Sequence record: NC_048182.1
DNA length: 64,000 bases
Strand: one strand, 5' to 3'
Shown: positions 3,091 through 22,400 of the stretch, piece by piece
Layout of the letters: each line of letters begins with the position of its first letter
How positions within the stretch are numbered: position 1 is the stretch's first letter
Translations under genes and position numbers: made by a program
Notes under the pieces: generated by a model
Told to the model about the DNA's origin: nothing
Databases searched by the model: none
Seen by the model: only the letters and a program-made list of their open reading frames with translations

Positions 3091-3416
3091 TGAAAAACAA
3101 ACCGGAATTACACTTTCTTAACTTTCATTATAAGTTGATTCCGGTACTTGGTTTTGCGGAAGAGTATTACTATAAGGTGACTTTCCGAATGGAAGGTCGC
3201 CAATATAGTTTTGTTTATCGTGATTTTAAACCAATGACGATAAATGACTTCTTCAGGCAGGTTGCTATTGTTACCAAGTGCCGAAACATTTTAAAACTAT
3301 GTTCCCGTTACCAAGTGACCGCCAGTAAAACTTGGTTTGATAAAGGTGGGAACAAGTTCACTAACCTAAAAGAGGACGTGGCATGCGCTTACCGGACAAA
3401 CTCCGTGCTTGGATAA
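3090..3416 (+). CDS. Hypothetical protein (108 aa)
   Basis: TAATG translational coupling. Confidence 0.65.
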   Translation: MKNKPELHFLNFHYKLIPVLGFAEEYYYKVTFRMEGRQYSFVYRDFKPMTINDFFRQVAIVTKCRNILKLCSRYQVTASKTWFDKGGNKFTNLKEDVACAYRTNSVLG

Positions 3417-5525: not shown

Positions 5526-5906
5526 ATGAGCAAATGTTCCCCAAGCATTCCGGTCCCGCCAGAAGCTTTAGCCAGAGTGAATCTGGTTGAAGAAAACCCA
5601 CACGAAATGGTTGAAGCTTCTTTATCAATCGAAATCCACCCTTGGGATGACAGCGATGTTATCTTCATGCATCTGGCCGACGGTGTTCGACTTCATGAAT
5701 GGTTGGTGAGAGTCATGCACTCCAAGGGAGAAATTGGACCATTCGTAGTTAACACCAAACCGATCATGTATAAAGAAGGTCACGTGGTCATCGTTCCTGA
5801 TTTCTCCCGTGCATTAAGTCTGGATACCATGATTCGTCTCACCAAACGTATTGGTGAAAAAGTTCAACAGGTCAAACAGATCTGTAATGCTTTAGTCAAT
5901 TTCTAA
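5526..5906 (+). CDS. Hypothetical protein (about 126 aa)
   Basis: ATG 5526 (MSKCSP) follows AAGGA SD; the track start at 5490 overlaps the upstream gene. Confidence 0.7.
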   Translation: MSKCSPSIPVPPEALARVNLVEENPHEMVEASLSIEIHPWDDSDVIFMHLADGVRLHEWLVRVMHSKGEIGPFVVNTKPIMYKEGHVVIVPDFSRALSLDTMIRLTKRIGEKVQQVKQICNALVNF

Positions 5907-5940
5907 CCAACTTAACCATTCTCCAATAGAGGTAGTATAA

Positions 5941-6291
5941 ATGAAACGTGCTCTTGTTCTCGTGGTAGCTATTAGTATGATCCTTACCGGTTGTTTTATG
6001 GATAATGAGAAGACTAATGCTGAGATCAGTGCTGGTAATCATTATTTAAAGGGTCAGGTAATCGCTCTAGAAGCCTGCTACACCAACGCGACTGAAACAG
6101 GGTCTACTTGTGTGGGTGTCATTAGTTATGATGGTACAAAGCGTTCTGGACGCATTATCGGGGAAGTTCAAATAGGAACTTCGGTGTATAAGGAATGTAC
6201 AAATAACGGGGAAGTAAAATGTGCTGATTTCTGGCGCACCTCTGTTGGAGAGACATATCTGAATGGTGGAGAGATCACTGGCATTCAGTAA
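5941..6291 (+). CDS. Putative lipoprotein (116 aa)
   Basis: MKRALVLVVAISMILTGC signal with LTGC lipobox; four further Cys; GAGG SD. Confidence 0.7.
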   Translation: MKRALVLVVAISMILTGCFMDNEKTNAEISAGNHYLKGQVIALEACYTNATETGSTCVGVISYDGTKRSGRIIGEVQIGTSVYKECTNNGEVKCADFWRTSVGETYLNGGEITGIQ

Positions 6292-6342
6292 AGTAATAGT
6301 TGTTGGTATTAAGTCTGACATTTTAAATATGTAAAGACATAA

Positions 6343-6396
6343 CCCCTACCCCTCCTCACGGAGTGGGTAGGGGGAGTATGTTACTTATTTTTTTTT
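6343..6396. terminator. Intrinsic terminator between convergent genes
   Basis: CCCCTACCCCTCC-TCAC-GGAGTGGGTAGGGG followed by a T-rich tract. Confidence 0.75.
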
Positions 6397-6398
6397 AC

Positions 6399-7070
6399 TT
6401 ATACGAACTGAACATCGAAGCGATTAGTCGGGATAGAACCATCGTTGATGTTAGTGGTCAGAGCCACTGTAGCTTGCAGGCTGAACGGCACACCTGCATC
6501 TTCACCAGCGATAGTAACCACAGCGTCAGCAGTGATAGTTTCAGTGGTAGAAGACTGGATAGATTTGAACGTCCAGGCCGTATTTTCCAGATCACTAGTG
6601 AACTCGAACTTATCAGCAATAGCTGTTGGTTCAACGGTAACACTGGTAACAGAAGGAAGAATATCGTTCTCACCTTTAAACACCTGGAAGCTAAACGCTT
6701 TACTTTCCCACAGATTCATGGTCAGCGCGCTGCTAGCGTTTTCAAGACGAGCAACATCAGCGGCAGTTACGACGAAGCTAATAGTCTTCGTGCTCTTACC
6801 CCAGTTCTCTACGTTCGCATTACCGCCAGCATCAGCATACTTGAAGACAACAGTGATGTCTTGAGTACCTGGAGCAACACCAACGAAAGGAACGTTAACG
6901 ATACCTTCTGCGCCTGCTACGAAGGCATTGACAGAAACCAAACCTTTAAGGTCTGAGGAATCTGGATCAAAGCTAATTTTACCAACGGGAACAGCTGCAC
7001 CTTCAAACGTAGGTTTAATCTGAAGGGAGGTCATCTGACCTACGACAACTGAAGCACTTTTATCCGCCAT
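6399..7070 (-). CDS. Small two-module Ig-like fibre subunit (223 aa), paralogue of the repeats in the giant genes
   Basis: AGGAG SD; SDLKGLVSVNAF matches SDLKGVISVNSF in the 5119-aa protein; C-terminal ~120 aa and IPTNRFDVQFV match the end of the 3124-aa protein. Confidence 0.8.
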   Translation of the reverse strand: MADKSASVVVGQMTSLQIKPTFEGAAVPVGKISFDPDSSDLKGLVSVNAFVAGAEGIVNVPFVGVAPGTQDITVVFKYADAGGNANVENWGKSTKTISFVVTAADVARLENASSALTMNLWESKAFSFQVFKGENDILPSVTSVTVEPTAIADKFEFTSDLENTAWTFKSIQSSTTETITADAVVTIAGEDAGVPFSLQATVALTTNINDGSIPTNRFDVQFV

Positions 7071-7085
7071 TTTACAACTCCTGGT

Positions 7086-7105
7086 AAAAGGGGCCGAAGC
7101 CCCTT
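7086..7105 (-). terminator. UUCG-tetraloop hairpin between the 3124-aa stop and the 223-aa SD
   Basis: Minus strand AAGGGGC-TTCG-GCCCCTTTT. Confidence 0.65.
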
Positions 7106-7108
7106 ATG

Positions 7109-10100
7109 TTAAATAAACTCAATATTGAAACGGTTGGTTGGAATACCAGTGGTGTTCGCAACTACTGTCGTATTGAATTCGATAGGAAGTACGTAGTCAT
7201 TACCGTTGTAGTGTACATTAACGTTCACTTTAACCAATAATGTTACATCCTCCAAAGAATCGGCAGAGATCGCTTTAATACCCCATACACCTTCACTGAT
7301 AGCATTGAACTCCAGGTTAGAGGAGATATCATTGTTCAGTGTGAGTGAAGCGTCAGATGTAATATCTGTATCGCCAACCATGACTTTAAAGGCTATTGGT
7401 TTTTGTTCCCAAAGCTGTAAAGACATTGCTGTGGTTTGTTCGGTAACTGCCGGAGCAGCGGCTTCTTCCGCATTCAATTTAAAGCTAAACGGTACAGCAC
7501 TCCAAGTGATGTCATTAACAACAGGTGAGATTTCTGCGTTAACAGTGACCTCGCCTACATTACCATCACCCACTACGGTAAGATCAAAGATACCGTCAGC
7601 GTTATAGACTGTTGACACTGTTACAGCTTTAGCAGGACCTTCTACTGAAACAATGCGAAGATTACCCGCCTCTGGAGCATTAGGGGTTAAGTACTTATCT
7701 CTGGTCAGCGTCAGAGTGACAGGGGTAACCGCATCCAAGGTAGAATCAATCGTGTCAACAGAGAGTGCTGACTTGATTGGAGACCCTGGGTTAGTGAAGA
7801 CCATGTCAGTCAGTTTGTAACTGTCAGTACTACCAGGTACGGCCACAGTAAGCGATATCGTAAATGTACCAGCGGTTTGACCGAGGTTCATTGAGAGACG
7901 ATATTCACCAGGTGTGGTTGCACTGTTATTGGTAAGTGTGTTACTGTACCCAGCCAGCACAGAGCGCCATTTTGGATTTTCAGTAACATCCAGGCTCACT
8001 TTGGTTGCGTTGGTAATTGGATTACCTTCACCGTCTTTCAGCGTAAACAGAATGAGATTGTTTTGCGCTGCAACAACAATAGTGGTATCCTGAGTCACAT
8101 TAATGACATAGTCAACACCAATTTGCGTAATACTGATTGTACCTGTCGTATCCAAGCTCGGAGATACAGAGTTATAAATACGAACAGTTTGATCACCTGT
8201 CACATCAGAAGCGATCTGTCCTACGAAGCGAAGTTTGAAACCTCTTTCCGTTACAGAACCAGGAACAACTTCAACACGTCCGCCTGTAGTTTCAATAACC
8301 ACATTTGGATCGCTAAGATCGACCACACTTCCGCTGTTAACAACAGAACAAGAAACCGCCAACTCATCCCCATACGTACCTGACAGAGTTCCTGTCATTG
8401 CGGAGATAACATAGGACGGCGCACTGGTCTGATAAATCGCAAATGGAACATCAATCGTTGCAGAGTTAATTCCTGGAAGATTTCCACTAGAGCCGGTGAG
8501 CAATACTGGAACCTTAATAACCCCACCACCTTCATATCCAGAAGTTGTTGCTTTAGCACTATAACTCAACGCTAAACCAGAACCACTTGGAAGAGTGACA
8601 CTGAGATTAGGAACAGTTGCTGGTGACCCATAGGCTTGAATCGTTGTCGGTTCGCCTCTGAACACACCCACAATTTTAAACCCACGGTCTGTGTTTGTTC
8701 CTGCGTCTGGATTGTTGGAAACCATCAAAATTCCATCAACTACACCAGCAAAAGGATTTTCCAAGTATGGTGTAAACTCAGCACCATTATAGTCGGCAAT
8801 GATGAACGTACCAGAACCAGTACGGACCAAAGCTTCATCGTTAAGACGATAAGTAAACTCAGTTAACACTTGAATGGAACTGATTGCTGCGTTAGCGACA
8901 ATCTGCCACACTGAAGATGCTTTCTGAATCACGTACGTGTTAGCGGTGACTTCAAGGTCTGTAATCAGGTTAGTAACATCCTCCGTTCCTGCTTTCAGTG
9001 TAAATGGAACACCAGTACCGATATCCCAAACTTTAACGTTAATAGGAGAATCGGTCAATACAAGGTCTCGAGCCGTAGCAGTGAACTTGATTGGCTGAGC
9101 GAAGGTAGTGGTAGCAAACAACCCATCGGTGTATTCATACGTCACGGTGATATTGGAACTATAATCACCGGTCGGGTTTGTGTTAGCCAGAATGATCTTG
9201 TAATCAAAACCACTTGCTGTTTTGGTAACTTGAATACCGCTATCAGCAGTGATCGTAACTTTAGGGTCATTCGTAGGGGTGATATCTCCACCGTATGTCA
9301 GCGTCATTGGCATTGAACCAGTGTCGTTAAACTTGCCAACAATATTACTGGTTTGACTCGCCACCAATGGAAGCTTAGGATGAAGTGGTTGCTGGATAAA
9401 CGTCAGTGTAACCACAGTTGTTTTAGCGACGGTATTCAACAAACGTACGCTATAAGCTATGGTTGTCGTGGTTTCTTCTTGAACGTCAGCGCTGAACTCA
9501 TACTGCATGAGTCTAGGTGCAATCGGTTTAAGAACCCCAAGTACTGATGATGCAGCGGCATTCGGGATAAAGTTGATAAAGTTTGGCGACACGTTTGGTC
9601 TGTTTAATTGGACCGCACTTCCTCGGTCAGCTAAGTTAAGCGTATGTGTAAACACATCACCGAACTTACCGGTAAATGTCGTTGGACTGGATACGATTAC
9701 CTGAGCAGGGGTCTCCAACGTTGTGCTGTAGTAGAACACAGGAATAACAAATGTCGCTGTATTCTTACCCACTACTTCTGCGTCGGTACCGTATTTCAAC
9801 TTGATACTTAAGTTATTAAACTGTACGGCATTGTTACTGTGTTTAAAGGCATAAGTCCATTTACCATCAGTAGCCATTGCACTACTCTGGCTATTGAACC
9901 CTGAGGTTAATCCAGAGAACGTTGCCGTTGTAACAACTCGGTCACCACGATAATAACCATACACTTGAGCACTACAAATGTTGTTAACATTGTTGTTCTT
10001 AACAGCAACTAGACCATCATAGTCAGTGTTGTAGGCTACAGGAACAATCCAGAATTCAGACCCATCATCTTTATCAATTGTTATGTTGATTGTCTTATTA

Positions 10101-13100
10101 ACGGTATAATCACGAACACCATTATTTACAACAACCACAAATTCAACTTGAGTAGCGACAGGACCAGTTACCCCACCTTTCTTACATTGCCAGACATTGT
10201 TAAGCGAATCGGTAGAGATTGCGTCAATGTAGTCGTTAGTAGTTACCTGAACATTTTTAACTGTTCCGGTTAGCCCGTTTACTGTAACACCAAATGGAAG
10301 AGTACCTTTACCCCAGTTACGGGTATTGATATCCGTTACATCTGTAAACGCGACCACATCAGCATTGGTTCCATCCCCAGCGATTGTAAAGATCTGGGTG
10401 TACTCCATGGTGTAAGTAACACCGTTAGCTAGGTAAGAGTACTTAATCTTAACCGGAACATCCACTGCGTCAGAACCATGGTTAGCTGCATTGATTACCG
10501 CATTCCAGCTATTAACAAGTCTCGTTCCTGGTGTGATAATCCCACTTGGTGAAGTAGTGATTGTAAGCCCACCTGAATATGTTGGTAGAGCGCTATCGTC
10601 TCTATAAACAAAATCTGCTGGGACTATAATAGAATCACCCTTAGCACCTGCGATTGGACCTGGTTGAGTGCCCGATGTGAAACGAATATCGGCATCCCAA
10701 ATCCAAACATCGATCTCATAGGTTTGCCAGTTCTTATCCTTAGTTCCCACAGGCCAAAGGTTATAGTTAGTGCCTTTGTAATTGACAGCGGCATTGAACT
10801 TAAATTTACCCGCTTTAAGACCTTTAAATGTAACGTAAGGTCTATTAGCCGGTGAACTGGTGGCATCAGAAACCCATTGAACAACACCCTGTGACTGTGC
10901 AAGGATGTATGCCGCATCGGACCCCCAGGTTCCTGCCTGATAGACACTGACTTTACGGAATGCCTGATCGACAGTTACTGCTACCGAATCTCCAACTAAA
11001 CCGTAAACCGTGCTCGCGCCAGCAGGGGTGGCTGTATATTCAACACCATCCCAAGGGCTGACATTGATTGTGGCCATGTGGGTGTGGTTTTCAGCAACAC
11101 CGTCGATAGTGACTACAAAGTCAAACTGAACTTGGTAAACACCACCCTCTAAAGGAATGGTCGGTTCAGGACGCCATATGTTTCCGTTGTTACCATAAAT
11201 GAACGTGTTACCGGTAATTTTAACGCTGCTAGGAGTAAGAAGTTCACCCGACGCATTACCGACGTAGCATTCAAACGGAATCACTGTGGAAGATTGCATT
11301 ACAGTGCCAGTGGTTGGAATGTCTTTGATATAGAGCTTACTCACATCAACAGTTTGGAATGTTAATGGTTCTAAATCGTAGACGATACCGCTCTTACCGG
11401 TTTCGTAGAACTTACCAGTTAGCGTAGTATCCCCACCGCTACCAGAAATGGAGCTATTCCCAACTTTCCATGCGTTATCTGAAACTAAGGTAGCATTGGA
11501 CATTGTGGTTTGAGCACCACCTGTCAATGCAATCGAGTTAAAGACCCCAAGCATGGGAACAGTACCTTCATAATGAGGGATATCGACAGTAAAGATAAGA
11601 TCAGTTTTAGTTGTCCCTTTAACTTCAAATCGAGTAGCACCAACTAATTTAACAATACCTTTTGCTTTCTTAACTGTCACGGCGACTGGGGAAGCTGGCG
11701 CTGGAGCAGCAAGGATAACATCTGGAGTTGACGCATTAGCAATTGCACCTATTACAGTGAAACTATCACCACTATGCCCAACTCCAACATTGACCGTCCA
11801 AACTCCATCACTACCCATCACTGCGGTGTAACCTTTAGGTTCTGCTACAACTGCATTACCTATGGCTGGAGTAATAGTCGTTTTAAGTCCTTTAACCACC
11901 TTATCCAACAGAACGACACTCTTCCCTTTTTCACTGATCGTAAACTTGAATTGGCGATTACCAGCCGCATCAAGAGTCTGACCAGAAACAGGAACGATGT
12001 TGTACCAGGTAAGCGGGGCGTAGCCAGAACTAAACTCAACGTAGATTGCCGCAGCTGTTGACGTGCTGCCATTATAGGTCGCATTAATGTTGTTAAACGC
12101 ACCGACGTTATTCGCAATGGAGGTACAGAACAGATACATCGAAGTCTGATCAACACCTAAATTACTCATGAACAGCGAAACGTTACCAGCCAATATGTTA
12201 TACGTGATACCTGGATCATCAGTAGGGATAATTACTTTATCAGAACGAATTTCCAGAATAGCACGGAACGCAGAGTTGGGACCCACTTTAGGATAAGGGG
12301 TCTGGTTACTCAAGTTATAAATGGACGTACCGCCAGTGCGGTAAGTTCTCATTCTAACCGCATGGGTTACCTGGGTGACATCTTCAATGTTGTTAGCTTG
12401 ACCATTAAGGAACTCTGGTTTCAGCGTGTAAACAATCGTTGAATTCTGATTGTGGTTGGTTGCGTTGCCGGTAGGACCATTAGTGTTAATGGTGTAACCC
12501 GCATTGCTTTCTACAGGACCACCTGCAACAATAGTCATGCTTGGACTGTTGGTTTGAGTGCTGTATACAACCTTATCACCAGCAGGCTTGCCACGGAAGA
12601 TAGGATAAAGAGTGTAAGTGTTGATTACCGGAGATGCTCCGATTGCACCTAACACAGTTTTCTTATCTGTATCGGAATAGTTGTATCCGATCTTCAACAT
12701 TTTACCATCCCAAGCAGGGAGAGTAAACGTTGCTTCGTAAGTGAGCACTTCATCATTACCATTAGAGGTAACAGTGAACTGATACATTACTTTAGTTGTA
12801 CCGCCTGCGGTTGGACCTGACCAAATTTCCCAATCACTTCCACCATGAGTGATAACATACTGATTAGGAGTGATGGTAACATCTTTAACTGTTGAAGTAA
12901 TATCCCCAGTCGTATCGTTAACCGTAAATGGTAAACGAGTATCCCGTTCAAACATCGCCACGTTAAATGGAGAAATACCTACAACGTGAACGACACTATT
13001 ATTAACAGTGGTGACGTTACCTGAGAAACTGTATTCGACGGTAGAACCTGGTTCGGTAAAGATGCCAGAAATAGCAACAGTTCCGAATGACGGACTGATT

Positions 13101-16100
13101 GTCACAGGGACTTTGAATTTATTCCCGCCAACATGACTAACAGAACCATTAATATCTGCCCCACCTGCAACACTGATCGACTTAAACACAATTGCAGACA
13201 GATCCGCAGGGGTCTGTTTGTAATGCATCATCGCCAATGAGAACTCGATATCGAGATGTTGCCCACCCACTGCTGGGATATCAGTAGCTGATGGTGTAAA
13301 CGTTACAGTAGACCTAGGAACTGGAATTGTAACAGTAACACGGGACCAACGGCCACTCATTCCGGCATCTGTGATTCGACCATCCAGTTGGATTGAATCT
13401 CCAGTATGTCCTGCTGCAAAATCCAGGATAACTTTATTCTGATCGGCAGGATCTTTGATATACGACCACGGTGAGTCTGGAACTATTGCAGAACCGTTAC
13501 CTGGAATAGGTATCACTTTAACAATAAAGGCTGTTGGGTTGGTTAATGTTCTTCCACTTTGCAAGAATGTAAAATGAAGTTCATTATCATCAGCAGAAAC
13601 AGCCGACGCGTCCAATCCACCCAAAGTGGTAGGTGCCACACTTCCAGTGCCCGAATATCTTATCCAGAAATTCCCGTCAGTACTTGTGCCGTCATTTTTA
13701 GGTTCAAACTTATACGCGGAGTTTTTAGTCCAGTAAGCGGTCAGAACGTTGTGGTATCCGGTAGAGGAATAAGCCGCACTGATCTGTGAATAGATCGTTG
13801 TGCCTTGACCATACACCATAGATTGAGCAACGTTATTTGGGGCGCTGGTACTAAACCCAGTTCGAGAATAAAAATACATTTCTTCCAATGGAATACGAAC
13901 ACCATTGGCTACGGCATAGATCACAGACATGGCAGCGCCAGCTGTTGCATCAGCTCGATAGTGAGTTACCTCACCAGTTAAACCATACAACCCACCCGCG
14001 TAACCATAGAGACTTAAGAAGTCGCCGTTGAAATAGCCTTTTTGCGCTGGTTGAGTAACATAGTCAACATTGGCTGTAGTTCCTGGCGAACCGGTCAACG
14101 TAAACTTCATTCCTGTAATTGGAATAGTAGACCCTTGCCATTGGTTCAGCTTACCGGCATTGGGGTGACTTTTCCCCATGAAAGTAATTTTCAGTTTGGT
14201 GTTATCTTCGGAAGGAGTTTGGCTAACAATGGTCATCCATGTTGCCACAGAAGCTGGATCCATTAAGACCTTATCAGCCGCTGCTTTACCACGGTAAACA
14301 ACTTCCACTTCGAATTCACGATTAGTCACAAGAGAGCCAAACAGGAGATCATCTTGTTTGGTGACCTTTAACATCAAACCGTCCCAAGCACCAATGTTAA
14401 ATGTTGCAACATACGAGTGCTCTTCTAGTTCACCATTATAACCAGGAACTTTGAATGTATAGGTGATTTTCTCGGCAACGCCTGCGGTTGGAGCAGTCCA
14501 GATTTCCCAGTTAGTGCCACCAGAAGTAATAATGTTAGTTGTCGGAGTAATAACCACATCGGTCATCTGACTCGTGACATCCACACCTTCTACTTTTACC
14601 TGGAATGGGATATCGGTTCCTTGTTGGAATACGTTTACATTTAACGGAGCATCAATATACTCTACATCAGTCACACGGTTAAATTGAACAGCAAACTCAA
14701 CCGGATAGGTTACAGCAGTACCTGATTCATTAACGCTGACTGTACCAGTAATCGTTGCTGTACCAGTAACTGCCGTTGGTGTGACCAGTGCTTCATAAAG
14801 ACCATTACCTTTATTGGTAATCGTCCCAACAGCGGTACCCTCTCCAGTGATAACCATATCACTAAAGGTAGCTGTGGTGACATCAGTCAGAACGTTATCA
14901 AACTGAAGTTGCTTCAGTGTGAACTGTACAGGAACTGGTTCTGTTTTAGAAACAGAGACTTCGCCGGTAGTCACACCCACCATTGGAGCTTTAGGGACAA
15001 CGATCTGGACATTACGTAAACCAAGGATATCACCGGCTGGAGTCTTAAACGCCCCAGACAGCATAATCCCGGTACCAGTATGACCGTTATCCGTACTCAG
15101 CGTCAACGTACCCACTGCTGGGCTATCGCTGATAGCGATATCATCGTAATACTTAATCAGCGCTTTCGGACCGTTAGAAACGATTGAGGGCTTCCCTACA
15201 AGGGTAAGTCCTGGAATCTCTTCTTCAGTATCAACACGACAAACAAGCACGGAAATATCGTTATGGGTAGACGGAGTGATTTCAGACGTTTGAATTGGGA
15301 CGAGGGTTAGGTTCTCACCAACTTCAGTGGTGTAAGATGAGGTCATTAATGACCAACCTGCATACCCAGGAGAATCAATATACGTTACCGCGTTAACAAA
15401 ACTTCCAACGGTTTCAAATAAGTTCTGCATCCAAATCCCATCGGTATCAAACCCAAGGATTGCCCGTGATGCTTGTGAAGAACCGGTGATGACTAAACGT
15501 GGATCCTGAGGGGTAATGATTTCATGACCAAGACGAATCTGGGTGATTGGGAACTTGTACGTTTGATAGTACTTGGTATCCGTTCTAGCAGGAGCGCCAG
15601 TTACAGTAATCGCTTTAGCCCAGATTTTAATGTAAAACCACATAACAAAGGAAGTTGGAGTTCCGGTGGTGATTCCATCTTTATAGAAAATGATGCGATT
15701 ATAAATCGCATCATTTACTGTCGTTCCGGTAATGGTTACAACCAACAGTTCTTTTTCAAGATCGTCCGATTGACTATTGATAGTTACTCTGATGTTTGCG
15801 CCAGTAGTAGGGGAGATCTTTGTTCCAGGGGAGAACCGTCCCTGGTAAGTAGGTTTAAAATAAAGTTTGCTTGGTGTGTTAAGTGTGCCTTCAGCGGTCC
15901 CCACTAACACTACTTTATAATCAATACCGTCGTATTGAGCGATATTGAAAATGACCTGTCCTTTACAATGATAAACAACACCACCATGTTCAACATCGAA
16001 AGTAAAATCGACAGTAGAATTCATGGATTGGGTTTTGTTACCGTTAACGACACGCCATTTGGTATTATCGGTTATAGTTATGTACTCGTTTGAGATCATA

Positions 16101-16483
16101 ACCACATTGGTAATTGAAGCCGTAATGTCTTCAGCGGGATCAGTTCCCAAGAACATAACTTTAAACGGTATGTCGCCCCACGTTCCTTCATCCCAAACTT
16201 TAACTGATTTGGTTGGCCATGAGACCTGAATTTTTGGATCGTTCACAACGTGAGAGAGGGTAACTGGCATAACCAGTTTGTGAAGCTTTTTGTAAACGAA
16301 TGTCAGGTTCAGCGTATACGTGGAATCCTGGGTGATATCACCCAGGAATTTGTACGTAATAGAATCCTCTTGGATGGTATCGATTTGGACGCTCGGGTGA
16401 GCGTCCAGTGTGATAACCATATCCTTATCGAGGTTGCTGATTGCCTGACCATCTATAGCAAGTTGTTGCTTCAGAGTGGTCAT
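7109..16483 (-). CDS. Giant Ig-like repeat protein, putative virion fibre (3124 aa)
   Basis: Thr/Gly/Val-rich beta sequence; about 7 copies of the V(W/F)x2G..PF.V...D(I/V)T..W...FNI..(W/Y)DG module; several GH(T/S)G modules. Confidence 0.8.
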   Translation of the reverse strand: MTTLKQQLAIDGQAISNLDKDMVITLDAHPSVQIDTIQEDSITYKFLGDITQDSTYTLNLTFVYKKLHKLVMPVTLSHVVNDPKIQVSWPTKSVKVWDEGTWGDIPFKVMFLGTDPAEDITASITNVVMISNEYITITDNTKWRVVNGNKTQSMNSTVDFTFDVEHGGVVYHCKGQVIFNIAQYDGIDYKVVLVGTAEGTLNTPSKLYFKPTYQGRFSPGTKISPTTGANIRVTINSQSDDLEKELLVVTITGTTVNDAIYNRIIFYKDGITTGTPTSFVMWFYIKIWAKAITVTGAPARTDTKYYQTYKFPITQIRLGHEIITPQDPRLVITGSSQASRAILGFDTDGIWMQNLFETVGSFVNAVTYIDSPGYAGWSLMTSSYTTEVGENLTLVPIQTSEITPSTHNDISVLVCRVDTEEEIPGLTLVGKPSIVSNGPKALIKYYDDIAISDSPAVGTLTLSTDNGHTGTGIMLSGAFKTPAGDILGLRNVQIVVPKAPMVGVTTGEVSVSKTEPVPVQFTLKQLQFDNVLTDVTTATFSDMVITGEGTAVGTITNKGNGLYEALVTPTAVTGTATITGTVSVNESGTAVTYPVEFAVQFNRVTDVEYIDAPLNVNVFQQGTDIPFQVKVEGVDVTSQMTDVVITPTTNIITSGGTNWEIWTAPTAGVAEKITYTFKVPGYNGELEEHSYVATFNIGAWDGLMLKVTKQDDLLFGSLVTNREFEVEVVYRGKAAADKVLMDPASVATWMTIVSQTPSEDNTKLKITFMGKSHPNAGKLNQWQGSTIPITGMKFTLTGSPGTTANVDYVTQPAQKGYFNGDFLSLYGYAGGLYGLTGEVTHYRADATAGAAMSVIYAVANGVRIPLEEMYFYSRTGFSTSAPNNVAQSMVYGQGTTIYSQISAAYSSTGYHNVLTAYWTKNSAYKFEPKNDGTSTDGNFWIRYSGTGSVAPTTLGGLDASAVSADDNELHFTFLQSGRTLTNPTAFIVKVIPIPGNGSAIVPDSPWSYIKDPADQNKVILDFAAGHTGDSIQLDGRITDAGMSGRWSRVTVTIPVPRSTVTFTPSATDIPAVGGQHLDIEFSLAMMHYKQTPADLSAIVFKSISVAGGADINGSVSHVGGNKFKVPVTISPSFGTVAISGIFTEPGSTVEYSFSGNVTTVNNSVVHVVGISPFNVAMFERDTRLPFTVNDTTGDITSTVKDVTITPNQYVITHGGSDWEIWSGPTAGGTTKVMYQFTVTSNGNDEVLTYEATFTLPAWDGKMLKIGYNYSDTDKKTVLGAIGASPVINTYTLYPIFRGKPAGDKVVYSTQTNSPSMTIVAGGPVESNAGYTINTNGPTGNATNHNQNSTIVYTLKPEFLNGQANNIEDVTQVTHAVRMRTYRTGGTSIYNLSNQTPYPKVGPNSAFRAILEIRSDKVIIPTDDPGITYNILAGNVSLFMSNLGVDQTSMYLFCTSIANNVGAFNNINATYNGSTSTAAAIYVEFSSGYAPLTWYNIVPVSGQTLDAAGNRQFKFTISEKGKSVVLLDKVVKGLKTTITPAIGNAVVAEPKGYTAVMGSDGVWTVNVGVGHSGDSFTVIGAIANASTPDVILAAPAPASPVAVTVKKAKGIVKLVGATRFEVKGTTKTDLIFTVDIPHYEGTVPMLGVFNSIALTGGAQTTMSNATLVSDNAWKVGNSSISGSGGDTTLTGKFYETGKSGIVYDLEPLTFQTVDVSKLYIKDIPTTGTVMQSSTVIPFECYVGNASGELLTPSSVKITGNTFIYGNNGNIWRPEPTIPLEGGVYQVQFDFVVTIDGVAENHTHMATINVSPWDGVEYTATPAGASTVYGLVGDSVAVTVDQAFRKVSVYQAGTWGSDAAYILAQSQGVVQWVSDATSSPANRPYVTFKGLKAGKFKFNAAVNYKGTNYNLWPVGTKDKNWQTYEIDVWIWDADIRFTSGTQPGPIAGAKGDSIIVPADFVYRDDSALPTYSGGLTITTSPSGIITPGTRLVNSWNAVINAANHGSDAVDVPVKIKYSYLANGVTYTMEYTQIFTIAGDGTNADVVAFTDVTDINTRNWGKGTLPFGVTVNGLTGTVKNVQVTTNDYIDAISTDSLNNVWQCKKGGVTGPVATQVEFVVVVNNGVRDYTVNKTINITIDKDDGSEFWIVPVAYNTDYDGLVAVKNNNVNNICSAQVYGYYRGDRVVTTATFSGLTSGFNSQSSAMATDGKWTYAFKHSNNAVQFNNLSIKLKYGTDAEVVGKNTATFVIPVFYYSTTLETPAQVIVSSPTTFTGKFGDVFTHTLNLADRGSAVQLNRPNVSPNFINFIPNAAASSVLGVLKPIAPRLMQYEFSADVQEETTTTIAYSVRLLNTVAKTTVVTLTFIQQPLHPKLPLVASQTSNIVGKFNDTGSMPMTLTYGGDITPTNDPKVTITADSGIQVTKTASGFDYKIILANTNPTGDYSSNITVTYEYTDGLFATTTFAQPIKFTATARDLVLTDSPINVKVWDIGTGVPFTLKAGTEDVTNLITDLEVTANTYVIQKASSVWQIVANAAISSIQVLTEFTYRLNDEALVRTGSGTFIIADYNGAEFTPYLENPFAGVVDGILMVSNNPDAGTNTDRGFKIVGVFRGEPTTIQAYGSPATVPNLSVTLPSGSGLALSYSAKATTSGYEGGGVIKVPVLLTGSSGNLPGINSATIDVPFAIYQTSAPSYVISAMTGTLSGTYGDELAVSCSVVNSGSVVDLSDPNVVIETTGGRVEVVPGSVTERGFKLRFVGQIASDVTGDQTVRIYNSVSPSLDTTGTISITQIGVDYVINVTQDTTIVVAAQNNLILFTLKDGEGNPITNATKVSLDVTENPKWRSVLAGYSNTLTNNSATTPGEYRLSMNLGQTAGTFTISLTVAVPGSTDSYKLTDMVFTNPGSPIKSALSVDTIDSTLDAVTPVTLTLTRDKYLTPNAPEAGNLRIVSVEGPAKAVTVSTVYNADGIFDLTVVGDGNVGEVTVNAEISPVVNDITWSAVPFSFKLNAEEAAAPAVTEQTTAMSLQLWEQKPIAFKVMVGDTDITSDASLTLNNDISSNLEFNAISEGVWGIKAISADSLEDVTLLVKVNVNVHYNGNDYVLPIEFNTTVVANTTGIPTNRFNIEFI

Positions 16484-16499
16484 GTAACCATTTCCTTTC

Positions 16500-19400
16500 T
16501 TAGTTAGGTAAGTAGACAGACTGATTTAACGTCACAGGATTATCCTGGTTCCCACGACCTGTTGTTTCGAACCCGTCATTTGAAGCCAACGGAGTCGGAA
16601 CCGTAAAGGTAGTGTTAACAACAGTGAGATAATCCACACCTTCCACAGTGACTACCATACTGATTGGGACTGTACCATTGGTCAAGTCTCCAGCCTTACG
16701 GGTTACCACCATAGAGAAGTTATCGCCTGGATACTGTTTCACATTAGCTACTGATTCCACAATCGCGCTGTTAAACGTAATTGTTTTGAACCCGACACCT
16801 TCGATGTTAGCAATATCAACAATCGGTCCACCGTTAGTTCCACGCACCTGAGTCAGATCAAAGAACACTTCAACTGGGTCGTTACCAACTTCGTTAGTGA
16901 TATTTTTGACTGTCAGAGATTCTTGCGGGATGGTTATTTGTGTTGCATTGATGTTGTACCAATTGTTATCAACTCTAATGACACCTTGAAGAGTGACAGT
17001 ACCACCAGTCCACCCTGTTGTCATTGCCACGTAACGCTTTCTATTTCCGCTTGGATCGTTAGGTGCTTGGTTAGATGGAACATTAAGCACCGGCTTTTGG
17101 CTACCAGTAGGAGTGATTACTTCAACGTAGTGTTCATAAGAATCACCAAGTCCATAACCTTCACCCGCTTGGTTACCAATAGTGCCAATCCATTTGGTAT
17201 CTGCGTTTTTGGCCGGAAGAGATGTAGTCCAGAATGCGGAAGTCCAATCAGCTTGTGGTGGTGCTACAAATTTGACGAACACCTGCAAGGTGGATTTCTT
17301 CCCAGGTTGATCAATTAACTCAGCAGTGATGTTATTACTACCCACCACGCCAAGCGCCTGGTTAATACCAGCGACCCAGAAGTTTGTCTGGTCTACAAAC
17401 TGACGACGCAGAGCAAGTGAAATAGTACCAAAGGTGATGGTCCATTTGACATTCGGGTCATTGTTAGCCAGTAACTGGTCACCATACATTAAGGTAAGTG
17501 GGAGTTTAGCCGGAGAAAGAAGACTAATATCCACTGGAGCAGCCGAACTACCACCCACGGTACTTGTGAGTTTCAGTTGCGGAGTCTGCAAAACGACATT
17601 GACCGTGTAATTCTGGTCAATCCCGTTAATGCGGATAATACCGGTAAGAGTACCTGCTCCCACATTACCAGTCGGAACAATATCGATAGAGTACGGGAAG
17701 TTAGCGTCACCACTTGCGCTGATAGGACCAGCAGAAGCAATTTCACCACCCGTAACAATTTCTCCAAATGCTCCGGTAGGGAATGATACCTTAGAACTGC
17801 CTTGCATTTGCTCTAACTTGAATTTAACCGTGATTGGTGTTAACTCAGGGTTATACTCTTGTTTCTCAGTCGTACCAGTAACTGGAGCTTGTGCAATATT
17901 GTTAAAGGTATTATTGACTTTCCACCAACCTTTATAGTTAGCATCACCGGAAGCAATAAACCCTGTGATGTTTAAGCCAGTACCTGTCCAGCCGGTAGTG
18001 ACATCAGCACCAATTAGTTTACGATCAGATGGCGTTACATATTGCATTGGACTCTGTGTAAGTATAGAGTTTCCATTAGCGGGAACGCTGGTTAATTTCA
18101 GATCGCTAAAGTTATCGATGTTCACTATTGTCGCAGCAATACGAACCTGGAACTGAAGCTGTTTAGCCTCATTAGCGACTGCCTGAGTTGTTGACAATGC
18201 TGTTGCGCTTGTACTAGTATTATCAGAAAGAGTAGTCGTCAGTGACGATGTCTTAACTGTACCAGTAGGTACGTAGGTAATGGTTATTGGTGAATTAATA
18301 CTTCCTTTACCATGTGTAATCGCAATCAGTATGTTGTCACCGACTGCATCAAAAATACTTGATGAGCGGGTAAACTTAATATCAGGGCTTGTTGGACGAA
18401 CACGCTGAGTACCGTACCATGCAGTCATTGCTATAGATATGTACTGATTGGTGTGGTATTTGTAGTCTATTCCAAGGACAGGTAACGGCTCAAGTACAAA
18501 CCGAGGAGAGCTGGTAATAGACAGTTCCTCTCCGTTAGACTTATCGCTTTCGAAGTTAACAAACACCTGGACATTATCGAGAGTGTCTTCATCCACTTTC
18601 TTAACGAACTTAAAGTTCATTTTTCCAGAAGCTGAGTTAACATACTCGATGACACCAGCAGGTACAGTGGTAATGGTCACGCCTGTTTGTGTTACGTTAA
18701 ACGTAGTTCCGTTATTGGTGCAGGTATAAGGAACACCGATTGCCGCATCACCGAAACCACCAGTAAATGCTTTTCCACCAGTAAAGGTTAGAACAAGATT
18801 ATTCTTAGCTTTAAAGGTTACCGAAGCAGCTTTAGTGATATACGGCGTCACATTACCCACATTTTGCTTGGTCAGCTGGAATACAGCATCACCTACAAAT
18901 TGTGGAGAACTCGACGTGTGGGTGTACTCTATCACCAACTTACCGTCTTGTACCACGGCCTCGCTAAAGCTTAGCCCAGTAATCGTCGGTGAATTAATGG
19001 TGACTTCTGTCACACCCAACCCAGCCCATTCCAGATCAAATTCAATATGTCCTGTTTCCCCTGGTGCATAAGCAACCGGAGTTGGGGAGTAATTAACAAC
19101 CCAAGTATCACGGTAAGTTGGGAAGCCAGGTCCTGCCCAATAGAACATTTGCTGGACAGGCATATCGATGAAAGTATCGCGGAATGGAATTTTCAGAGCA
19201 TATATGAGGGTCTTAGTTGCGGCCTGGCCACTCACTGGACCGTTAACAACCCAGAACCATTTACCCACCGCTTTATGTTCCTCAGGAATTTCAAGGATCC
19301 AGTCATTAGCTGTAACGTTAGTGACTTCACATAAAGTAGAAATATCCGTAGTACCCGACATAATCGTCAAGGTGTTTGGGGTGATACCATACAGATATTC

Positions 19401-22400
19401 TCTTAATCCAAATGTTGGATTAGCGGTAATACGCGGATAGTCAGAAGGATCGGTAATTGTCATTGGCTGATCGAACTCACCTTTGGCAACTATACCAGGA
19501 CTGACTTCATATTCCACTTTAACGTTTACAGTCTTAGGACCTTTCTCACCCAGTGGAGTCGTAATCTCATAAAGGAAACTAGATACCTTAAACTCAGTGA
19601 TGGTAAAGTCACTTGCAACTGTGAAGGTCAGTTTACTGTCATTAACCGCAACATTATTTCCGTTGTGAGTAATAACTAAACCTGCACTACCTGTATCGAG
19701 GTTACCACCAATAATGGTTCCGATACCTGAGAACTCAAGAGGTGGAACAGCCGTTTTCAGATTGACCGTCAACTCTTGTTTGTGTGTTTCACCATACGCA
19801 GTCAGAATGATATCCGCCGTAAAGGTTTCATCAGCCGTTGCGTCTTTGATTACTTTAACCACAATCTCATCAGCAGAAACACTGACGATCTCAACCCACT
19901 CAGCCGGATTAGCAGTGATGGTCACTGCGGCATGGTTCAGTGGAAGGTTTGCACCTTGGTAGGTGGCAGAAGCACCCAGGTTTACAGTCTCTTGTTCAAA
20001 AGCATCAACCACGTCATCAACCAGAATGAATTCTACTTGAGACGGATCAGCGGCTTTCAATTTCAAAGTTACTGGATAAACAACACCGTCTTCATCAGTA
20101 ATGGTACCTTTAACCAATACATCACCTGTAGTTCCTGTCCCTTTCAGACTAATGAACTGAGTATGAGTTACTGGGTCTTTGATTCCATTAGCCACATAAG
20201 TAGCTGGACCTTCGATGGATGTGTAAACGAAGGTACTAATAAAGCGATACAATCCAGACTTACGAGCCTGAGTTAAGCGGAAGTCCACAGAAGTTGTTTT
20301 CTCTGTGCTGGTATTCACTTCGTTATTATCAATAGTCGAAAGCACCGGAGCGCCTGGGAGGTTTTGAGTAACGAAGCTTACTGGTAAGCGAGAACGATGG
20401 ATAGGAGCGCCATACGTCGCACCAGTGGTTAATTCCACGGTATCCAAAGTAATCGGTGTATTGATTTCAATGGTTCCAGGTTTATGACTCAACTCAACAG
20501 GAACGTGGTAACGACCTACTGAATCACGTTTTAAACCAGCTAATGGAATAGTAGAAGTTACCAACCCACTGCTCTTGTCTCTGATAACCAATTGACCATA
20601 AAGAACTGCAGCATTATCTAAAGTCCAGTTAGGACCTTTGAATGGGGTAGGGGTCGAACCCTGGGTAACCCAGTCGTACTCTGGTTGAGCTACGGTGAAC
20701 AGGAATTCACCAGCAACGTTAGCCTGAGGGACTTTATACTCACTCGCTGCAGTTGTTGATGCAGTGGCGCTGTAAGTGGACAGAGAGTGGTAAGTAGAGT
20801 ACTTGACACCTTTATAAGTGAAATCGAAATAGAAATTCACCCATGCAGTGCTTTTGAATCTGACAACCACACCGCTAGCAACACGTTCAACAATTTCCAA
20901 CTTAGCAGCCGCACCAGGTGAAGTATCACCATCACGCAACGCAATAGCTGTGAAATCAGAACTGGTGATTGGAACAGCGACCTCATTATAGAAAGCATCG
21001 AAGTTCACGTAATAAACATCACCGACTGCCCCACCAAGGTTAACATCTGTGTTACTTCTTGCCATGATGGTCAGAGTGTTGGCCGTACCCACAAGCAGAC
21101 GAACGTAAGAATACGCATACGTTTTGTTCAGTACTGGGGTATCACCACTCGTCGGACTGTACTTACATGAAACAACCAAGTTGGTATTAGCGGAAGCTAC
21201 TGTGGTTTTAATCACAAAGACTTTGCTGAACCCATCAGGGTCGTTGGTTACACTGGTTACTGTGTTTGGAGCAGGGATAGAACTATGATCAGGGTCGTGT
21301 TCAAAGTCCGTGTTAGGGACCAACAATCCTAAACGTTCCATTCTTACTTTGACTGTCAGGGAATTTCCACCAATTACAGAGGTAGGAGCAACCGGAGTGA
21401 CAGTAGCTACTTTTAACGTATTACCGCTAAACTTCAGAATAGTCATTGGAACTTCTACAACCATTTCGGTTTCGAAGCCAGCATCCTGAACAGTAATAGT
21501 AAAGCGCGCAGTACCAGTAACATCTACAGTTGTGTCTTTATAGATCACAGTGTAGGTGTCGTCACTATTGAGTTTGAAGTATGAAGTATTGCTGTTGAGC
21601 ATCAAACCAGTCAGAACCGCAGTATCAGAGATATCGCGACCATCCAACCCACTCAGAACCTTGAACGGTAATTTATACGTCTTACCATCTTCGACTTCAG
21701 CATCCGTTACATCAGCAACCGTAGGGTTACCCTCAACAGTTTGTTGTGTTAGTGTTAATGGGACCGTAATCTTAGCAACGCCTTTGTATTCAAAGATAAC
21801 ACTTGGGCGATGAGTAGTCTCAGCAGTAATTGTCTCCAGGAAGCGATAAGAGATACTCTCAGGATAAACCGTAGAGATACCAACTTTAGTACCTGATGAC
21901 ATTGAGATTTTCAGATTAGGATCATCATTTTCTAACACAACCCCGTTATAGCTAACTTGTTGCTGGAGAAGCGCTGGTGCGTATTGTGTACCAGTGCCCA
22001 CTGTTTCAAACGGAGAAACAGTTTCCAGAACAATCAGCATCACTTCGATCCCTAAGGTTACGTCTTTCCAGTCATATCCTTCAACCGGAGTTGCGTTACC
22101 ATTTTTCACTTTGAACCGCAGTACAACATTACCGCTAGCCAAAGAGGAACCGCCTGTGTAGTTAACAGTGATGGATCCATCACTATTCGGGGTTGTGCCA
22201 TCCACGGTGATTAACGTACCGAGCTGACTATTAGCCAGATCAAGTTCAACGTTATCAGCCAGGTTGTTCGATCCCCAAGAACCTGTGAACTTCATTGAAC
22301 CTGGTTTACCAACACCAACTGTAGCAGAGGCCGCAGCAGGATGGATATCCAGAACCGCATCGTTAAATGGCGCGATAACAAAGTTGGCAGATTGCTCTAA

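What the first reader, a model, noticed from the sequence alone, without database searches (positions are those of the whole stretch)
6399..7144. Self-complementing 223-aa subunit: candidate head-to-tail polymerising phage fibre
Seen: the 223-aa protein starts abruptly inside a repeat domain (MADKSASVVVGQMTSLQIKP) and ends with a lone beta-strand (IPTNRFDVQFV). Joining its C-terminus to its own N-terminus gives RFDVQFV|ADKSASVVVGQ. This reproduces intact internal junctions of the 5119-aa protein: VLDIHP-AAASATVGVGK (~22311-22360) and PRFYCQF-TPTVSEGVLGE (~27001-27060). The 3124-aa giant ends in the same strand (IPTNRFNIEFI) after a homologous ~120-aa module. Known: donor-strand complementation builds chaperone-usher pili. 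Inference: the giant's last strand inserts into a 223-aa subunit, whose last strand recruits the next, forming an extensible Ig-like filament. I know of no description of this in jumbo phages.
Basis: partly seen in the sequence, partly recalled or inferred. Interest (0 to 1): 0.88.

Follow-up and report, generated by a model that had tools for sequence, protein, structure and literature searches.

The report
Two-domain link protein ending giant chain
The 223-residue protein of jumbo phage pEt-SU is two Ig-like domains plus a highly conserved free C-terminal tail, and comparison across relatives suggests it plugs end-to-end onto the neighbouring giant proteins; whether it also polymerises with itself, or is in the virion at all, is not shown.

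Summary
The window is Edwardsiella phage pEt-SU, a nucleus-forming jumbo phage of the OBP group. The ORF (6399-7070, minus strand, gp131), both quoted termini and the quoted 5119-aa strings are all real. Its last ~115 aa match the C-terminus of the 3124-aa protein (E 6e-11).

AlphaFold gives two complete Ig-like sandwiches (residues 4-102 and 107-206). The 17-residue tail (207-223) is unpaired in the monomer and is the most conserved stretch of the family.

New evidence comes from about 15 related genomes and a census of 1.84 billion proteins:
- The tail module is always at a C-terminus.
- The p223-type N-domain (gamma) always starts a protein that directly follows a tail-bearing gene.
- A second pair of terminus types, B tail then alpha N-domain, follows the same rule.
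- Both boundary types occur as contiguous junctions inside the 5119-aa protein. There the tail equivalent is a beta-strand three residues before strand A of the next domain, exactly where p223 begins.

I read p223 as a link in a chain of proteins joined in gene order (confidence 0.5). Self-polymerisation stays possible, because pEt-SU encodes no other gamma domain, but it is untested (about 0.18). Virion location is unverified.

The parts
6399..7070 (-). gene of the 223-aa protein (pEt-SU gp131), including its stop codon
   Evidence: ORF list and RefSeq annotation. 24 orthologues of 221-230 aa at 48-100% identity.
6756..7070 (-). residues 1-105: N-terminal Ig-like domain (the 'gamma' or N-type domain), the proposed acceptor
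   Evidence: AF2 strands at 4-10, 13-18, 32-34, 45-47, 58-64, 68-78 and 92-102, with pLDDT above 90. The HMM finds it at the N-terminus of every non-giant protein that has it. Internal copies lie in the 5119-aa protein.
6453..6755 (-). residues 106-206: C-terminal Ig-like domain ('C-type')
   Evidence: AF2. Homologous to the last domain of the 3124-aa protein and to internal copies in both giants.
6402..6452 (-). residues 207-223: conserved C-terminal tail (an NDG turn, IPTNR, then the amphipathic FDVQFV), the proposed donor element
   Evidence: Most conserved 12-residue window of the family (0.96; 9 of 12 core positions invariant). Coil and unpaired in the monomer model. Present only on terminal copies of the C-type domain; internal copies stop before it.
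7088..7105 (-). 7-bp stem with a UUCG loop between the 3124-aa gene and the 223-aa gene
   Evidence: -13.6 kcal/mol for the 50-nt stretch 7066-7115 containing it. It is the only such hairpin in the 64-kb window. It is conserved with different stem sequences in OBP, Kc263, L012, L013 and L014.
7078..7082 (-). AGGAG ribosome-binding site, 7 nt before the ATG of the 223-aa gene
   Evidence: Sequence. It implies independent initiation. The gap to the upstream stop is 38 nt, so the gene is not in frame with the 3124-aa ORF.
7109..16483 (-). gene of the 3124-aa protein (gp132): alpha N-domain, variable Ig-like array, C-type domain and A tail
7112..7447 (-). residues 3013-3124 of the 3124-aa protein: terminal C-type domain plus A tail (the last 12 aa lie at 7112-7147)
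   Evidence: BLASTP E 6e-11; HMM 2.8e-20, ending at the last residue.
16187..16483 (-). residues 1-99 of the 3124-aa protein: conserved 'alpha' N-terminal domain
   Evidence: The same N-terminus occurs in OBP 205 and 206, Kc263 021, N1M2 160, Survivor 295 and 296, and in proteins of 201 to 3223 aa. HMM.
16500..31859 (-). gene of the 5119-aa protein (beta N-terminus, B tail)
   Evidence: Nine homologues of 5094-5134 aa.
16503..16577 (-). last 25 residues of the 5119-aa protein: 'B tail'
   Evidence: Conserved C-terminus in the proteins that precede alpha-N genes.
22374..22607 (-). 5119-aa protein residues 3085-3162: internal C-type domain
   Evidence: HMM; AF2.
22338..22352 (-). residues 3170-3174 (LDIHP): junction strand, the cis equivalent of the tail
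   Evidence: AF2 beta-strand with pLDDT about 95, three residues before strand A of the next domain. It follows the conserved N-D turn, as the tail does.
22035..22337 (-). residues 3175-3275: internal N-type domain. p223 residue 1 aligns to residue 3174.
   Evidence: HMM positions 5-96 at residues 3178-3268; AF2.
21705..22016 (-). residues 3282-3385: a B-tail-like segment directly followed by an internal alpha-like domain (the cis equivalent of the 5119 to 3124 boundary)
   Evidence: Window sequence. Alpha HMM E 1.9e-16 at residues 3298-3385. The separate B-tail HMM does not reach threshold for the short segment; its likeness (about 10 of 24 identical) is by eye.
24450..25007 (-). about residues 2285-2470 of the 5119-aa protein: an internal N-type plus C-type pair collinear with p223 residues 8-204 (bounds approximate)
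   Evidence: hhalign probability 93%, E 3.4e-7; HMM and BLAST.
31986..36452 (-). gene of the 1488-aa protein, first of the same-strand cluster. Its part in the system is not established.
   Evidence: It ends in a short amphipathic stretch. No family hits.

Best explanation
p223 (gp131) is a two-Ig-domain link protein at the end of a multi-protein array of Ig-like repeat proteins assembled head-to-tail in gene order (5119 aa, then 3124 aa, then 223 aa).

Shown:
- The proteins of this cluster have a small set of conserved terminus types.
- A C-type domain carrying the 'A tail' is always a C-terminus. The p223-type 'gamma' domain always starts the next gene.
- A 'B tail' C-terminus is always followed by a gene with an 'alpha' N-domain.
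- Both boundary types exist as uninterrupted junctions inside the 5119-aa protein.
- The tail is outside the fold and unpaired in the p223 monomer model.

Inferred:
- The gene boundaries are split inter-domain junctions.
- The A tail of the 3124-aa protein lies against the N-terminal edge of p223's gamma domain, as the equivalent strand does in cis, and joins the two proteins non-covalently.
- The variable middles of these proteins are spacers.
- p223's own A tail is then left free. In relatives it would hold a cap protein. In pEt-SU the only gamma domain in the genome is p223's own, so it either recruits further p223 copies or has another partner.
For: - Identity and family: the window is pEt-SU. 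Orthologues occur in OBP, Kc263, AH04, SXP01 and about 20 metagenomic phages.
- Structure: the model has pLDDT 93.6 and shows two sandwiches plus an unpaired tail. The best PDB matches are tandem Ig domains such as titin Z1Z2.
- Grammar in my tally over about 15 loci: every large A-tailed protein is directly followed by a gamma-N gene, and every gamma-N gene is directly preceded by an A-tailed gene. 16 of 17 B-tailed genes are followed by an alpha-N gene.
- Census of 1.84 billion representative proteins: 40 hits. The C-type plus tail match ends at the last residue in every case, in proteins of 95 to 4123 aa. Gamma starts at residues 1-5 in all non-giant hits.
- Alpha...A proteins range from 201 to 3223 aa with both ends conserved.
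- Internal C-type copies lack the tail.
- Cis junctions: C-type, junction strand, N-type, B-like segment and alpha-like domain are contiguous at residues 3085-3385 of the 5119-aa protein.
- AF2 of residues 3060-3290 (pLDDT 88.7) makes the tail equivalent a strand three residues before strand A.
- The tail is the most conserved segment. It stays invariant in seven lineages without a cap gene.
- No other gamma domain, A tail, alpha domain or B tail is found in six-frame translations of the whole pEt-SU genome, scanned piece by piece.
Against: - No complex could be modelled and no coordinates were available. Whether the junction strand pairs with the N-type domain or folds back on the G strand of the C-type domain is not known.
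- The tail's pLDDT of 84 in the monomer may mean it packs on its own domain.
- The grammar can arise by unequal crossing-over in a repeat array plus conserved synteny, so it is not independent proof of binding.
- Both p223 domains look complete, so this would be edge augmentation rather than completion of a missing core strand.
- Virion location is unsupported. The OBP GenBank record, from the group that sequenced OBP, marks many genes 'putative virion structural protein' but not OBP_203-207. RefSeq does the same for pEt-SU gp131-134.
- There are no Pfam, PHROG or PDB sequence matches.
Confidence: 0.5

Rival explanations
1. p223 polymerises head-to-tail with itself: the tail of one copy inserts into the gamma domain of the next. 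This would form an open-ended Ig-like filament seeded by the tail of the 3124-aa protein.
For: - p223 carries both the acceptor-type domain and the donor-type tail.
- The hydrophobic face of the tail (F, V or I, F) is the same in giant tails and small-subunit tails.
- pEt-SU has no other gamma domain anywhere in its genome, and no OBP_203-type cap by tblastn.
- Even so, the tail is invariant in at least seven cap-less lineages, so it must have a partner or a role.
- The extended tandem-Ig geometry makes a closed monomer unlikely, and none was predicted.
Against: - In OBP, AH04, L008-L011 and Survivor the chain ends in a single distinct cap protein with a gamma domain and no A tail, and N1M2 has a 62-aa candidate cap. 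That looks like a defined chain.
- Small-subunit tails differ consistently from giant tails: D-V-Q with a final Q or E, against N-I/V-E with a final hydrophobic residue. This holds in cap-less lineages too, which suggests a different partner.
- A hairpin resembling a weak terminator lies upstream of the gene rather than after it, which gives no sign of higher expression.
- No chaperone is evident that would prevent runaway polymerisation.
- No homo-oligomer could be modelled.
Confidence: 0.18
2. The proteins act independently. The C-type domain plus tail would be a self-contained terminal module. Either the tail packs on its own domain as an end cap that shields the last sandwich, or the module anchors each protein to a common site, as the C-terminal capsid-binding domain of T4 Hoc does. 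On this reading p223 is a short stand-alone decoration or adhesin, and the terminus grammar reflects shared descent and synteny only.
For: - The tail is always terminal and absent from internal copies, as an end cap would be.
- Its pLDDT of 84 without beta pairing suggests a defined position on its own domain.
- Both p223 domains are complete folds.
- The grammar can be generated by unequal crossing-over.
- Hoc has the same overall plan, an Ig string plus a conserved C-terminal binding domain (abstract of PMC10385173, seen).
Against: - It does not explain why the N-termini (alpha, gamma) are as conserved as the C-termini while the middles vary from 0 to about 3000 residues.
- It does not explain why 201-aa proteins consist of only an alpha domain plus the tail module.
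- It does not explain the 62-aa gamma-only ORF that follows the A-tailed protein in N1M2.
- It does not explain why both boundary types reappear as contiguous junctions in cis.
Confidence: 0.25
3. A relic of gene fission. An ancestral giant ORF was cut by stop codons at domain junctions, and the pieces no longer associate. p223 would be a free two-domain protein with an unrelated role, or one produced mainly as an occasional fusion.
For: - p223 residues 8-204 are collinear with an internal N-type plus C-type pair of the 5119-aa family.
- The junction homology fits a fission origin.
- The gap between the upstream stop and the small gene's ATG is a multiple of three in 8 of 10 relatives.
Against: - The termini are more conserved than the bodies of the proteins.
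- The tail carries a conserved insertion (IPTNR) that internal junctions lack.
- The small gene has been kept, always in the same position, in at least 24 lineages.
- In pEt-SU the two ORFs are out of frame and the small gene has its own strong ribosome-binding site.
Confidence: 0.07

Closest known systems
Chaperone-usher pili (donor-strand complementation and exchange, e.g. type 1 and P pili); from general knowledge
   Same: Ig-like subunits are proposed to join non-covalently through a terminal strand that carries alternating hydrophobic residues. Tip or cap subunits use the same acceptor fold. Order along the fibre is set by end compatibility.
   Different: In pili the donor is an N-terminal extension and the acceptor fold lacks its last strand. 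Here the donor is C-terminal and both domains are complete in the model. There are no chaperone or usher genes and no pilin family match. The setting here is cytoplasmic phage proteins.
Type V pili of Bacteroidota (FimA/Mfa1 class; C-terminal strand exchange after proteolytic removal of an N-terminal strand); from general knowledge
   Same: The polarity matches: a C-terminal strand of one subunit is thought to occupy the site next to the N-terminal strand region of the next subunit. p223 begins exactly where an N-terminal strand present in the cis version is missing.
   Different: There is no sequence or family relationship and no lipoprotein signal. The 'missing' strand is absent from the gene rather than removed by a protease. 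Polymerisation is not shown.
T4 long tail fibre (gp34, gp35, gp36, gp37 joined end to end); from general knowledge
   Same: Several gene products would join end-to-end in the order of their genes, with conserved joint regions and variable shafts.
   Different: T4 fibres are trimeric beta-structured rods that need dedicated chaperones. Here the units are single-chain Ig-like beads. There is no homology (PHROG search empty).
Titin Z1Z2 and telethonin
   Same: It is the best structural match of the p223 model, an extended tandem Ig pair. In that complex a partner joins terminal Ig domains by beta-strand cross-linking.
   Different: The likeness is in fold only (13% identity). In titin the partner is a separate small protein, not the tail of the next chain.
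T4 Hoc and other Ig-like phage decoration proteins
   Same: A string of Ig-like domains with a conserved C-terminal module (abstract of PMC10385173, seen).
   Different: There is no family match. Here the N-termini are conserved as well, and the proteins reach 5119 aa. Capsid binding was not tested.

Membership tests
OBP gp204 / pEt-SU gp131 family (uncharacterised) | Full-length similarity, 221-230 aa, positioned as the gene after the A-tailed large protein | tested here: met
   24 orthologues at 48-100% identity over the full length. The position is conserved in every locus examined.
Tandem Ig-like beta-sandwich proteins (fold class) | Two seven- to nine-stranded sandwiches in an extended arrangement | tested here: met
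   AF2 pLDDT 93.6. Foldseek gives probability 1.0 to titin, NCAM, Robo, cadherin and LigA tandem domains, and to viral Ig-like proteins.
Chaperone-usher pilins | Incomplete Ig fold that lacks the C-terminal G strand, leaving a groove | tested here: not met
   Both domains are modelled as complete sandwiches at pLDDT above 90. Only a short extra N-terminal edge strand, seen in the cis junction, is absent.
Chaperone-usher pilins | N-terminal donor extension | tested here: not met
   The N-terminus runs straight into strand A at residue 4. The extension is C-terminal.
Chaperone-usher pilins | Periplasmic chaperone and usher genes nearby; a pilin family match | tested here: not met
   No Pfam or PHROG match for p223 or the cluster proteins tested (the last 500 aa of the 3124-aa protein and the 1488-aa protein). 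PDB profile search is empty.
Type V pilins (FimA/Mfa1) | Sequence or family membership and a lipoprotein precursor | tested here: not met
   No Pfam hit. The N-terminus MADK... has no signal or lipobox.
Type V pilins (FimA/Mfa1) | A C-terminal strand donated to the next subunit | tested here: inconclusive
   The tail is unpaired in the monomer and its equivalent is a strand in cis. No inter-chain model could be made.
Hoc-like decoration proteins | Hoc family match and a C-terminal capsid-binding domain | tested here: not met
   No Pfam or PHROG match. Capsid binding is not testable with these tools.
Phage tail fibre proteins (trimeric, T4/T5/lambda types) | Family match, or a position in a tail or baseplate module | tested here: not met
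   No PHROG match. The cluster lies between the ribonucleotide reductase small-subunit gene and small hypothetical genes. pEt-SU has a separately annotated tail fibre gene, gp197.
Virion structural proteins of OBP-like phages | Detected in, or annotated as part of, the particle | tested here: inconclusive
   OBP_203-207 and pEt-SU gp131-134 are 'hypothetical protein', while many other genes in the same records are marked virion structural. The OBP paper with the proteome was not readable here.

The most novel reading that the evidence does not exclude
OBP-like jumbo phages would build a beads-on-a-string array of up to about 10,000 residues from three to five gene products. The joints would follow a two-letter code (B tail into alpha domain, A tail into gamma domain) made from split inter-domain junctions. 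In cap-less phages such as pEt-SU, the 223-aa subunit would extend the array by polymerising on its own tail. That would be a chaperone-free, C-terminal strand-donating Ig filament in a virus.
Probability: 0.17. Interest if true: 0.85.

Novelty: new variant of a known kind. Interest (0 to 1): 0.6.

Why it matters
These are among the largest proteins encoded by any phage, and every one of them is annotated as hypothetical.

If the terminus grammar reflects real joints, it explains two things. It explains how such arrays can be cut into different numbers of genes in different phages without loss of function. It also gives a simple, testable rule for which protein binds which.

It would add a viral, cytoplasmic example to the short list of fibres held together by strand donation between Ig-like domains. 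It would also offer small natural connector modules: proteins of about 200 aa made only of an acceptor domain and a donor module.

If instead the tails are end caps or anchors, the finding reduces to an ordinary family of Ig-like decoration proteins.

Tried and rejected
I scored the 18-residue string quoted in the finding (the last 7 plus the first 11 residues of p223 after the Met) against the 5119-aa protein and its shuffles. It was not above chance (one search timed out).
- A tail-only HMM found no internal tail copies in the giants. It hit only the two termini.
- Pfam and PHROG searches of p223, the giants and the cap proteins gave nothing above threshold. The sub-threshold hits were Invasin_D3, PKD and NPCBM.
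- The PDB profile search was empty.
- Literature searches found no description of these proteins or of strand-donating phage fibres. The OBP genome and proteome paper is not held. The N1M2, Kc263 and SXP01 papers give electron microscopy remarks only.
- Programmed read-through or frameshift joining the 3124-aa and 223-aa ORFs is rejected for pEt-SU. The gap is 38 nt, so the ORFs are out of frame, and the small gene has its own ribosome-binding site.
- A sigma-70 promoter and terminator scan of 5900-7600 was uninformative.
- The structure tools return no coordinates, so which sheet the junction strand joins, and where the tail lies in the monomer, could not be read. No multimer prediction is available.
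- The alignment tool printed consensus lines. The observation reported rests only on the window's own sequence and HMM searches.


Full report
**What is there**

The window is identical to Edwardsiella phage pEt-SU, NC_048182 positions about 124001-188000. pEt-SU is a nucleus-forming jumbo phage of the OBP group: shell protein, PhuZ and split RNA polymerases are annotated elsewhere in the genome.

The finding's ORF lies at 6399-7070 on the minus strand. It encodes 223 aa with the quoted start and end and is gp131, 'hypothetical protein'. It is the last gene of a same-strand cluster: ribonucleotide reductase small subunit (36575-37726), then proteins of 1488 aa, 5119 aa, 3124 aa and 223 aa. The next gene converges on it. 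None of the large proteins has a Pfam or PHROG match.

**Checking the observation**

- The C-terminal 115 residues of p223 match the C-terminus of the 3124-aa protein, with 31% identity and E 6e-11. Both end in the IPTNRF... motif.
- The two strings quoted from the 5119-aa protein are at the stated places.
- As bare peptides they are not convincing. The joined 18-mer scores 23 at best against the 5119-aa protein, while its shuffles give 22.0 +/- 3.8, and the cited sites are not the top hits.
- At domain level the first junction is real. HMMs of the two halves of the p223 family place a C-type domain at 3085-3159 and an N-type domain at 3178-3268, with p223 residue 1 falling on residue 3174.
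- The same arrangement, with the same N-D/G turn after the last strand, occurs in a 5283-aa relative.
- p223 residues 8-204 are also collinear with an internal N-type plus C-type pair near residue 2285.

**Structure**

With 24 orthologues, AlphaFold2 gives a confident model with pLDDT 93.6 and pTM 0.65. It has two beta-sandwiches at residues 4-102 and 107-206.

The last 17 residues have no beta pairing, with pLDDT of 84 falling to 73. The model is not a closed monomer. The nearest solved structures are extended tandem Ig pairs, led by titin Z1Z2. The viral library returns only relatives and generic Ig-like proteins.

The tail is the most conserved part of the family. The share of the commonest residue is 0.96 over the best 12-residue window, against 0.68 and 0.75 for the two domains. 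Its end, R-F-D-V-Q-F-V, has the alternation expected of a strand with one buried face.

**The terminus grammar**

Reading the ends of all cluster proteins showed a small set of terminus types. The set covers OBP, Kc263, N1M2, Survivor, four IMG/VR contigs and five metagenomic contigs.

| Type | End | Description |
|---|---|---|
| A tail | C-terminus | C-type domain plus IPTNRF... |
| B tail | C-terminus | ...NPVTL.QS.YLPN |
| alpha | N-terminus | M.TLKQ...G..(I/L)SN.D |
| beta | N-terminus | MAE.IKVNKK... |
| gamma | N-terminus | the p223 N-domain |

- In my tally every large A-tailed protein is directly followed by a gamma-N gene.
- Every gamma-N gene is directly preceded by an A-tailed gene.
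- 16 of 17 B-tailed genes are followed by an alpha-N gene.
- A profile search of 1.84 billion representative proteins found only 40 relatives. In each, the tail module ends at the last residue, whether the protein has 95 or 4123 residues. In all non-giant hits, gamma starts at residues 1-5.
- Internal C-type copies stop before the tail.
- Alpha...A proteins run from 201 to 3223 aa with both ends conserved.
- In seven genomes or contigs the last gene is a 'cap' with a gamma domain and a different C-terminus: OBP_203, AH04_194, Survivor, and L008 to L011. N1M2 has a 62-aa ORF with only a weak gamma match.
- pEt-SU, Kc263 and L012 to L016 have no such gene.
- A six-frame HMM scan of the whole pEt-SU genome, done piece by piece, finds no further gamma, alpha, A-tail or B-tail module.

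**Both boundary types exist in cis**

In the 5119-aa protein the order at residues 3085-3385 is:

- a C-type domain
- an N-D turn and a short segment (LDIHP)
- an N-type domain
- a B-tail-like segment
- an alpha-like domain (alpha HMM E 1.9e-16)

The order reproduces, without interruption, both the 3124-to-223 boundary and the 5119-to-3124 boundary.

AlphaFold2 of residues 3060-3290, with nine homologues, gives pLDDT 88.7. It makes LDIHP a beta-strand with pLDDT about 95. Seven coil residues separate it from the last C-type strand, and only three separate it from strand A of the N-type domain. p223 starts immediately after this strand.

Compared with the internal junction, the terminal tail has an extra IPTNR between the turn and the strand-like end.

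**Interpretation**

The simplest reading is that the gene boundaries are split inter-domain junctions and that the proteins reassociate head-to-tail in gene order. The A tail would take the place of the cis junction strand next to the gamma domain. That makes p223 a link protein.

This is inference, for three reasons:

- No complex could be modelled and no coordinates were available.
- The short three-residue connection favours, but does not prove, that the junction strand belongs with the N-type domain rather than folding back on the C-type G strand.
- The grammar can also be produced by unequal crossing-over in a repeat array.

I give the link model 0.5.

**The polymer claim**

In favour:

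- p223 has both elements.
- The buried face of its tail matches that of the giant tails.
- pEt-SU has no other gamma domain.
- The tail is invariant in cap-less lineages.

Against:

- Relatives end the chain with one distinct cap.
- Small-subunit tails differ consistently from giant tails: D-V-Q with a final Q or E, against N-I/V-E with a final hydrophobic residue. pEt-SU's own tail ends F-V.
- The hairpin lies upstream of the gene.
- Nothing shows high expression.

I give the polymer about 0.18.

**Rivals**

- The tail module may be a self-contained end cap or a Hoc-like anchor, and the proteins may act independently (0.25). This fits the tail's fairly high pLDDT and the complete folds. It does not explain the conserved N-termini, the 201-aa alpha-plus-tail proteins or the cis junctions.
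- A fission relic with no interaction is the weakest reading (0.07).

**Is it a fibre on the particle?**

This is unknown.

- The OBP record marks many genes 'putative virion structural protein' but not OBP_203-207. pEt-SU's RefSeq annotation does the same for gp131-134.
- The paper with OBP's particle proteome could not be read.
- Electron microscopy notes are contradictory and unspecific. Kc263 has a 'tail ... with visible fibers' (PMC8402661), while for N1M2 no tail fibers were visible (PMC7058600).

**Comparison and novelty**

Functionally the proposal resembles donor-strand assembly of pili, and in polarity it resembles type V pili. In gene-order collinearity it resembles the T4 long tail fibre. 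It is a member of none of these (see the membership table).

I found no description of these proteins or of this grammar. I rate it a new variant of a known kind, with interest 0.6. The grammar and the cis junctions are solid and testable. The binding, the polymer and the location are not yet shown.

Noticed in passing
window 7088-7105 (- strand); also OBP (L002), Kc263 (L003), L012, L013, L014 between the same two genes: A GC-rich hairpin with a UUCG loop sits between the stop of the A-tailed large gene and the ribosome-binding site of the small gene. It is the only such hairpin in the 64-kb window. It is kept in five relatives with different, compensating stem sequences, and is absent where the gap is short (L008, L015, L016). 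It could be a weak terminator, a processing site or a stability element that sets the ratio of the two products.
   Followed up: partly
gap between the A-tail gene stop and the next gene's ATG, in OBP, Kc263, L008 and L012-L016 (window: 7071-7108): The gap is a multiple of three in 8 of 10 giant-to-small boundaries, with lengths of 15, 18, 33, 39, 42, 48 and 48 nt among them. Naive binomial P is about 0.003, and the lineages are not independent. In pEt-SU the gap is 38 nt, so the genes are out of frame. Over all 17 A-to-gamma boundaries the count is 11 of 17.
   Followed up: partly
window 21705-22016 (- strand), residues 3282-3385 of the 5119-aa protein: An internal B-tail-like segment is fused to an alpha-like domain. 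The last ~10 residues of the B tail and the first ~10 residues of the alpha N-terminus both align to the same internal segment, as if the junction strand were duplicated at the split.
   Followed up: partly
L004:12466-12654 (Klebsiella phage N1M2 gp159): A 62-aa ORF directly follows the A-tailed protein. Its first ~26 residues weakly match the start of the gamma domain (HMM E 0.0033). It may be a minimal cap or the remnant of a longer cap gene.
   Followed up: no
window 31986-36452 (- strand), C-terminus of the 1488-aa protein; Kc263 gp019: The first large protein of the cluster also ends in a short amphipathic stretch (...IPVSFNVVL; Kc263 ...PLTFSYKL). This may be a third tail type, preceding the beta N-terminus of the 5119-aa protein.
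   Followed up: no
window 4762-5520 (+) and 41946-42701 (+): Two genes 36 kb apart each match one half of the same PHROG (phrog_30474). The first matches profile positions 172-277 and the second matches positions 1-114.
   Followed up: no
window about 29700-29860 (- strand), residues 668-705 of the 5119-aa protein; Survivor homologue P0073: There is a weak, sub-threshold NPCBM carbohydrate-binding match (E 0.0033). A source names the Survivor homologue 'PA14 domain-containing protein'. Together these hint at sugar binding by the giant.
   Followed up: no
window 53539-55119 (+), 46484-47668 (+), 36575-37726 (-): The window also holds a GroEL-type chaperonin, a thymidylate synthase and the small subunit of ribonucleotide reductase (PHROG and Pfam matches). 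The giant cluster therefore lies among metabolism genes, not in an annotated structural module.
   Followed up: no
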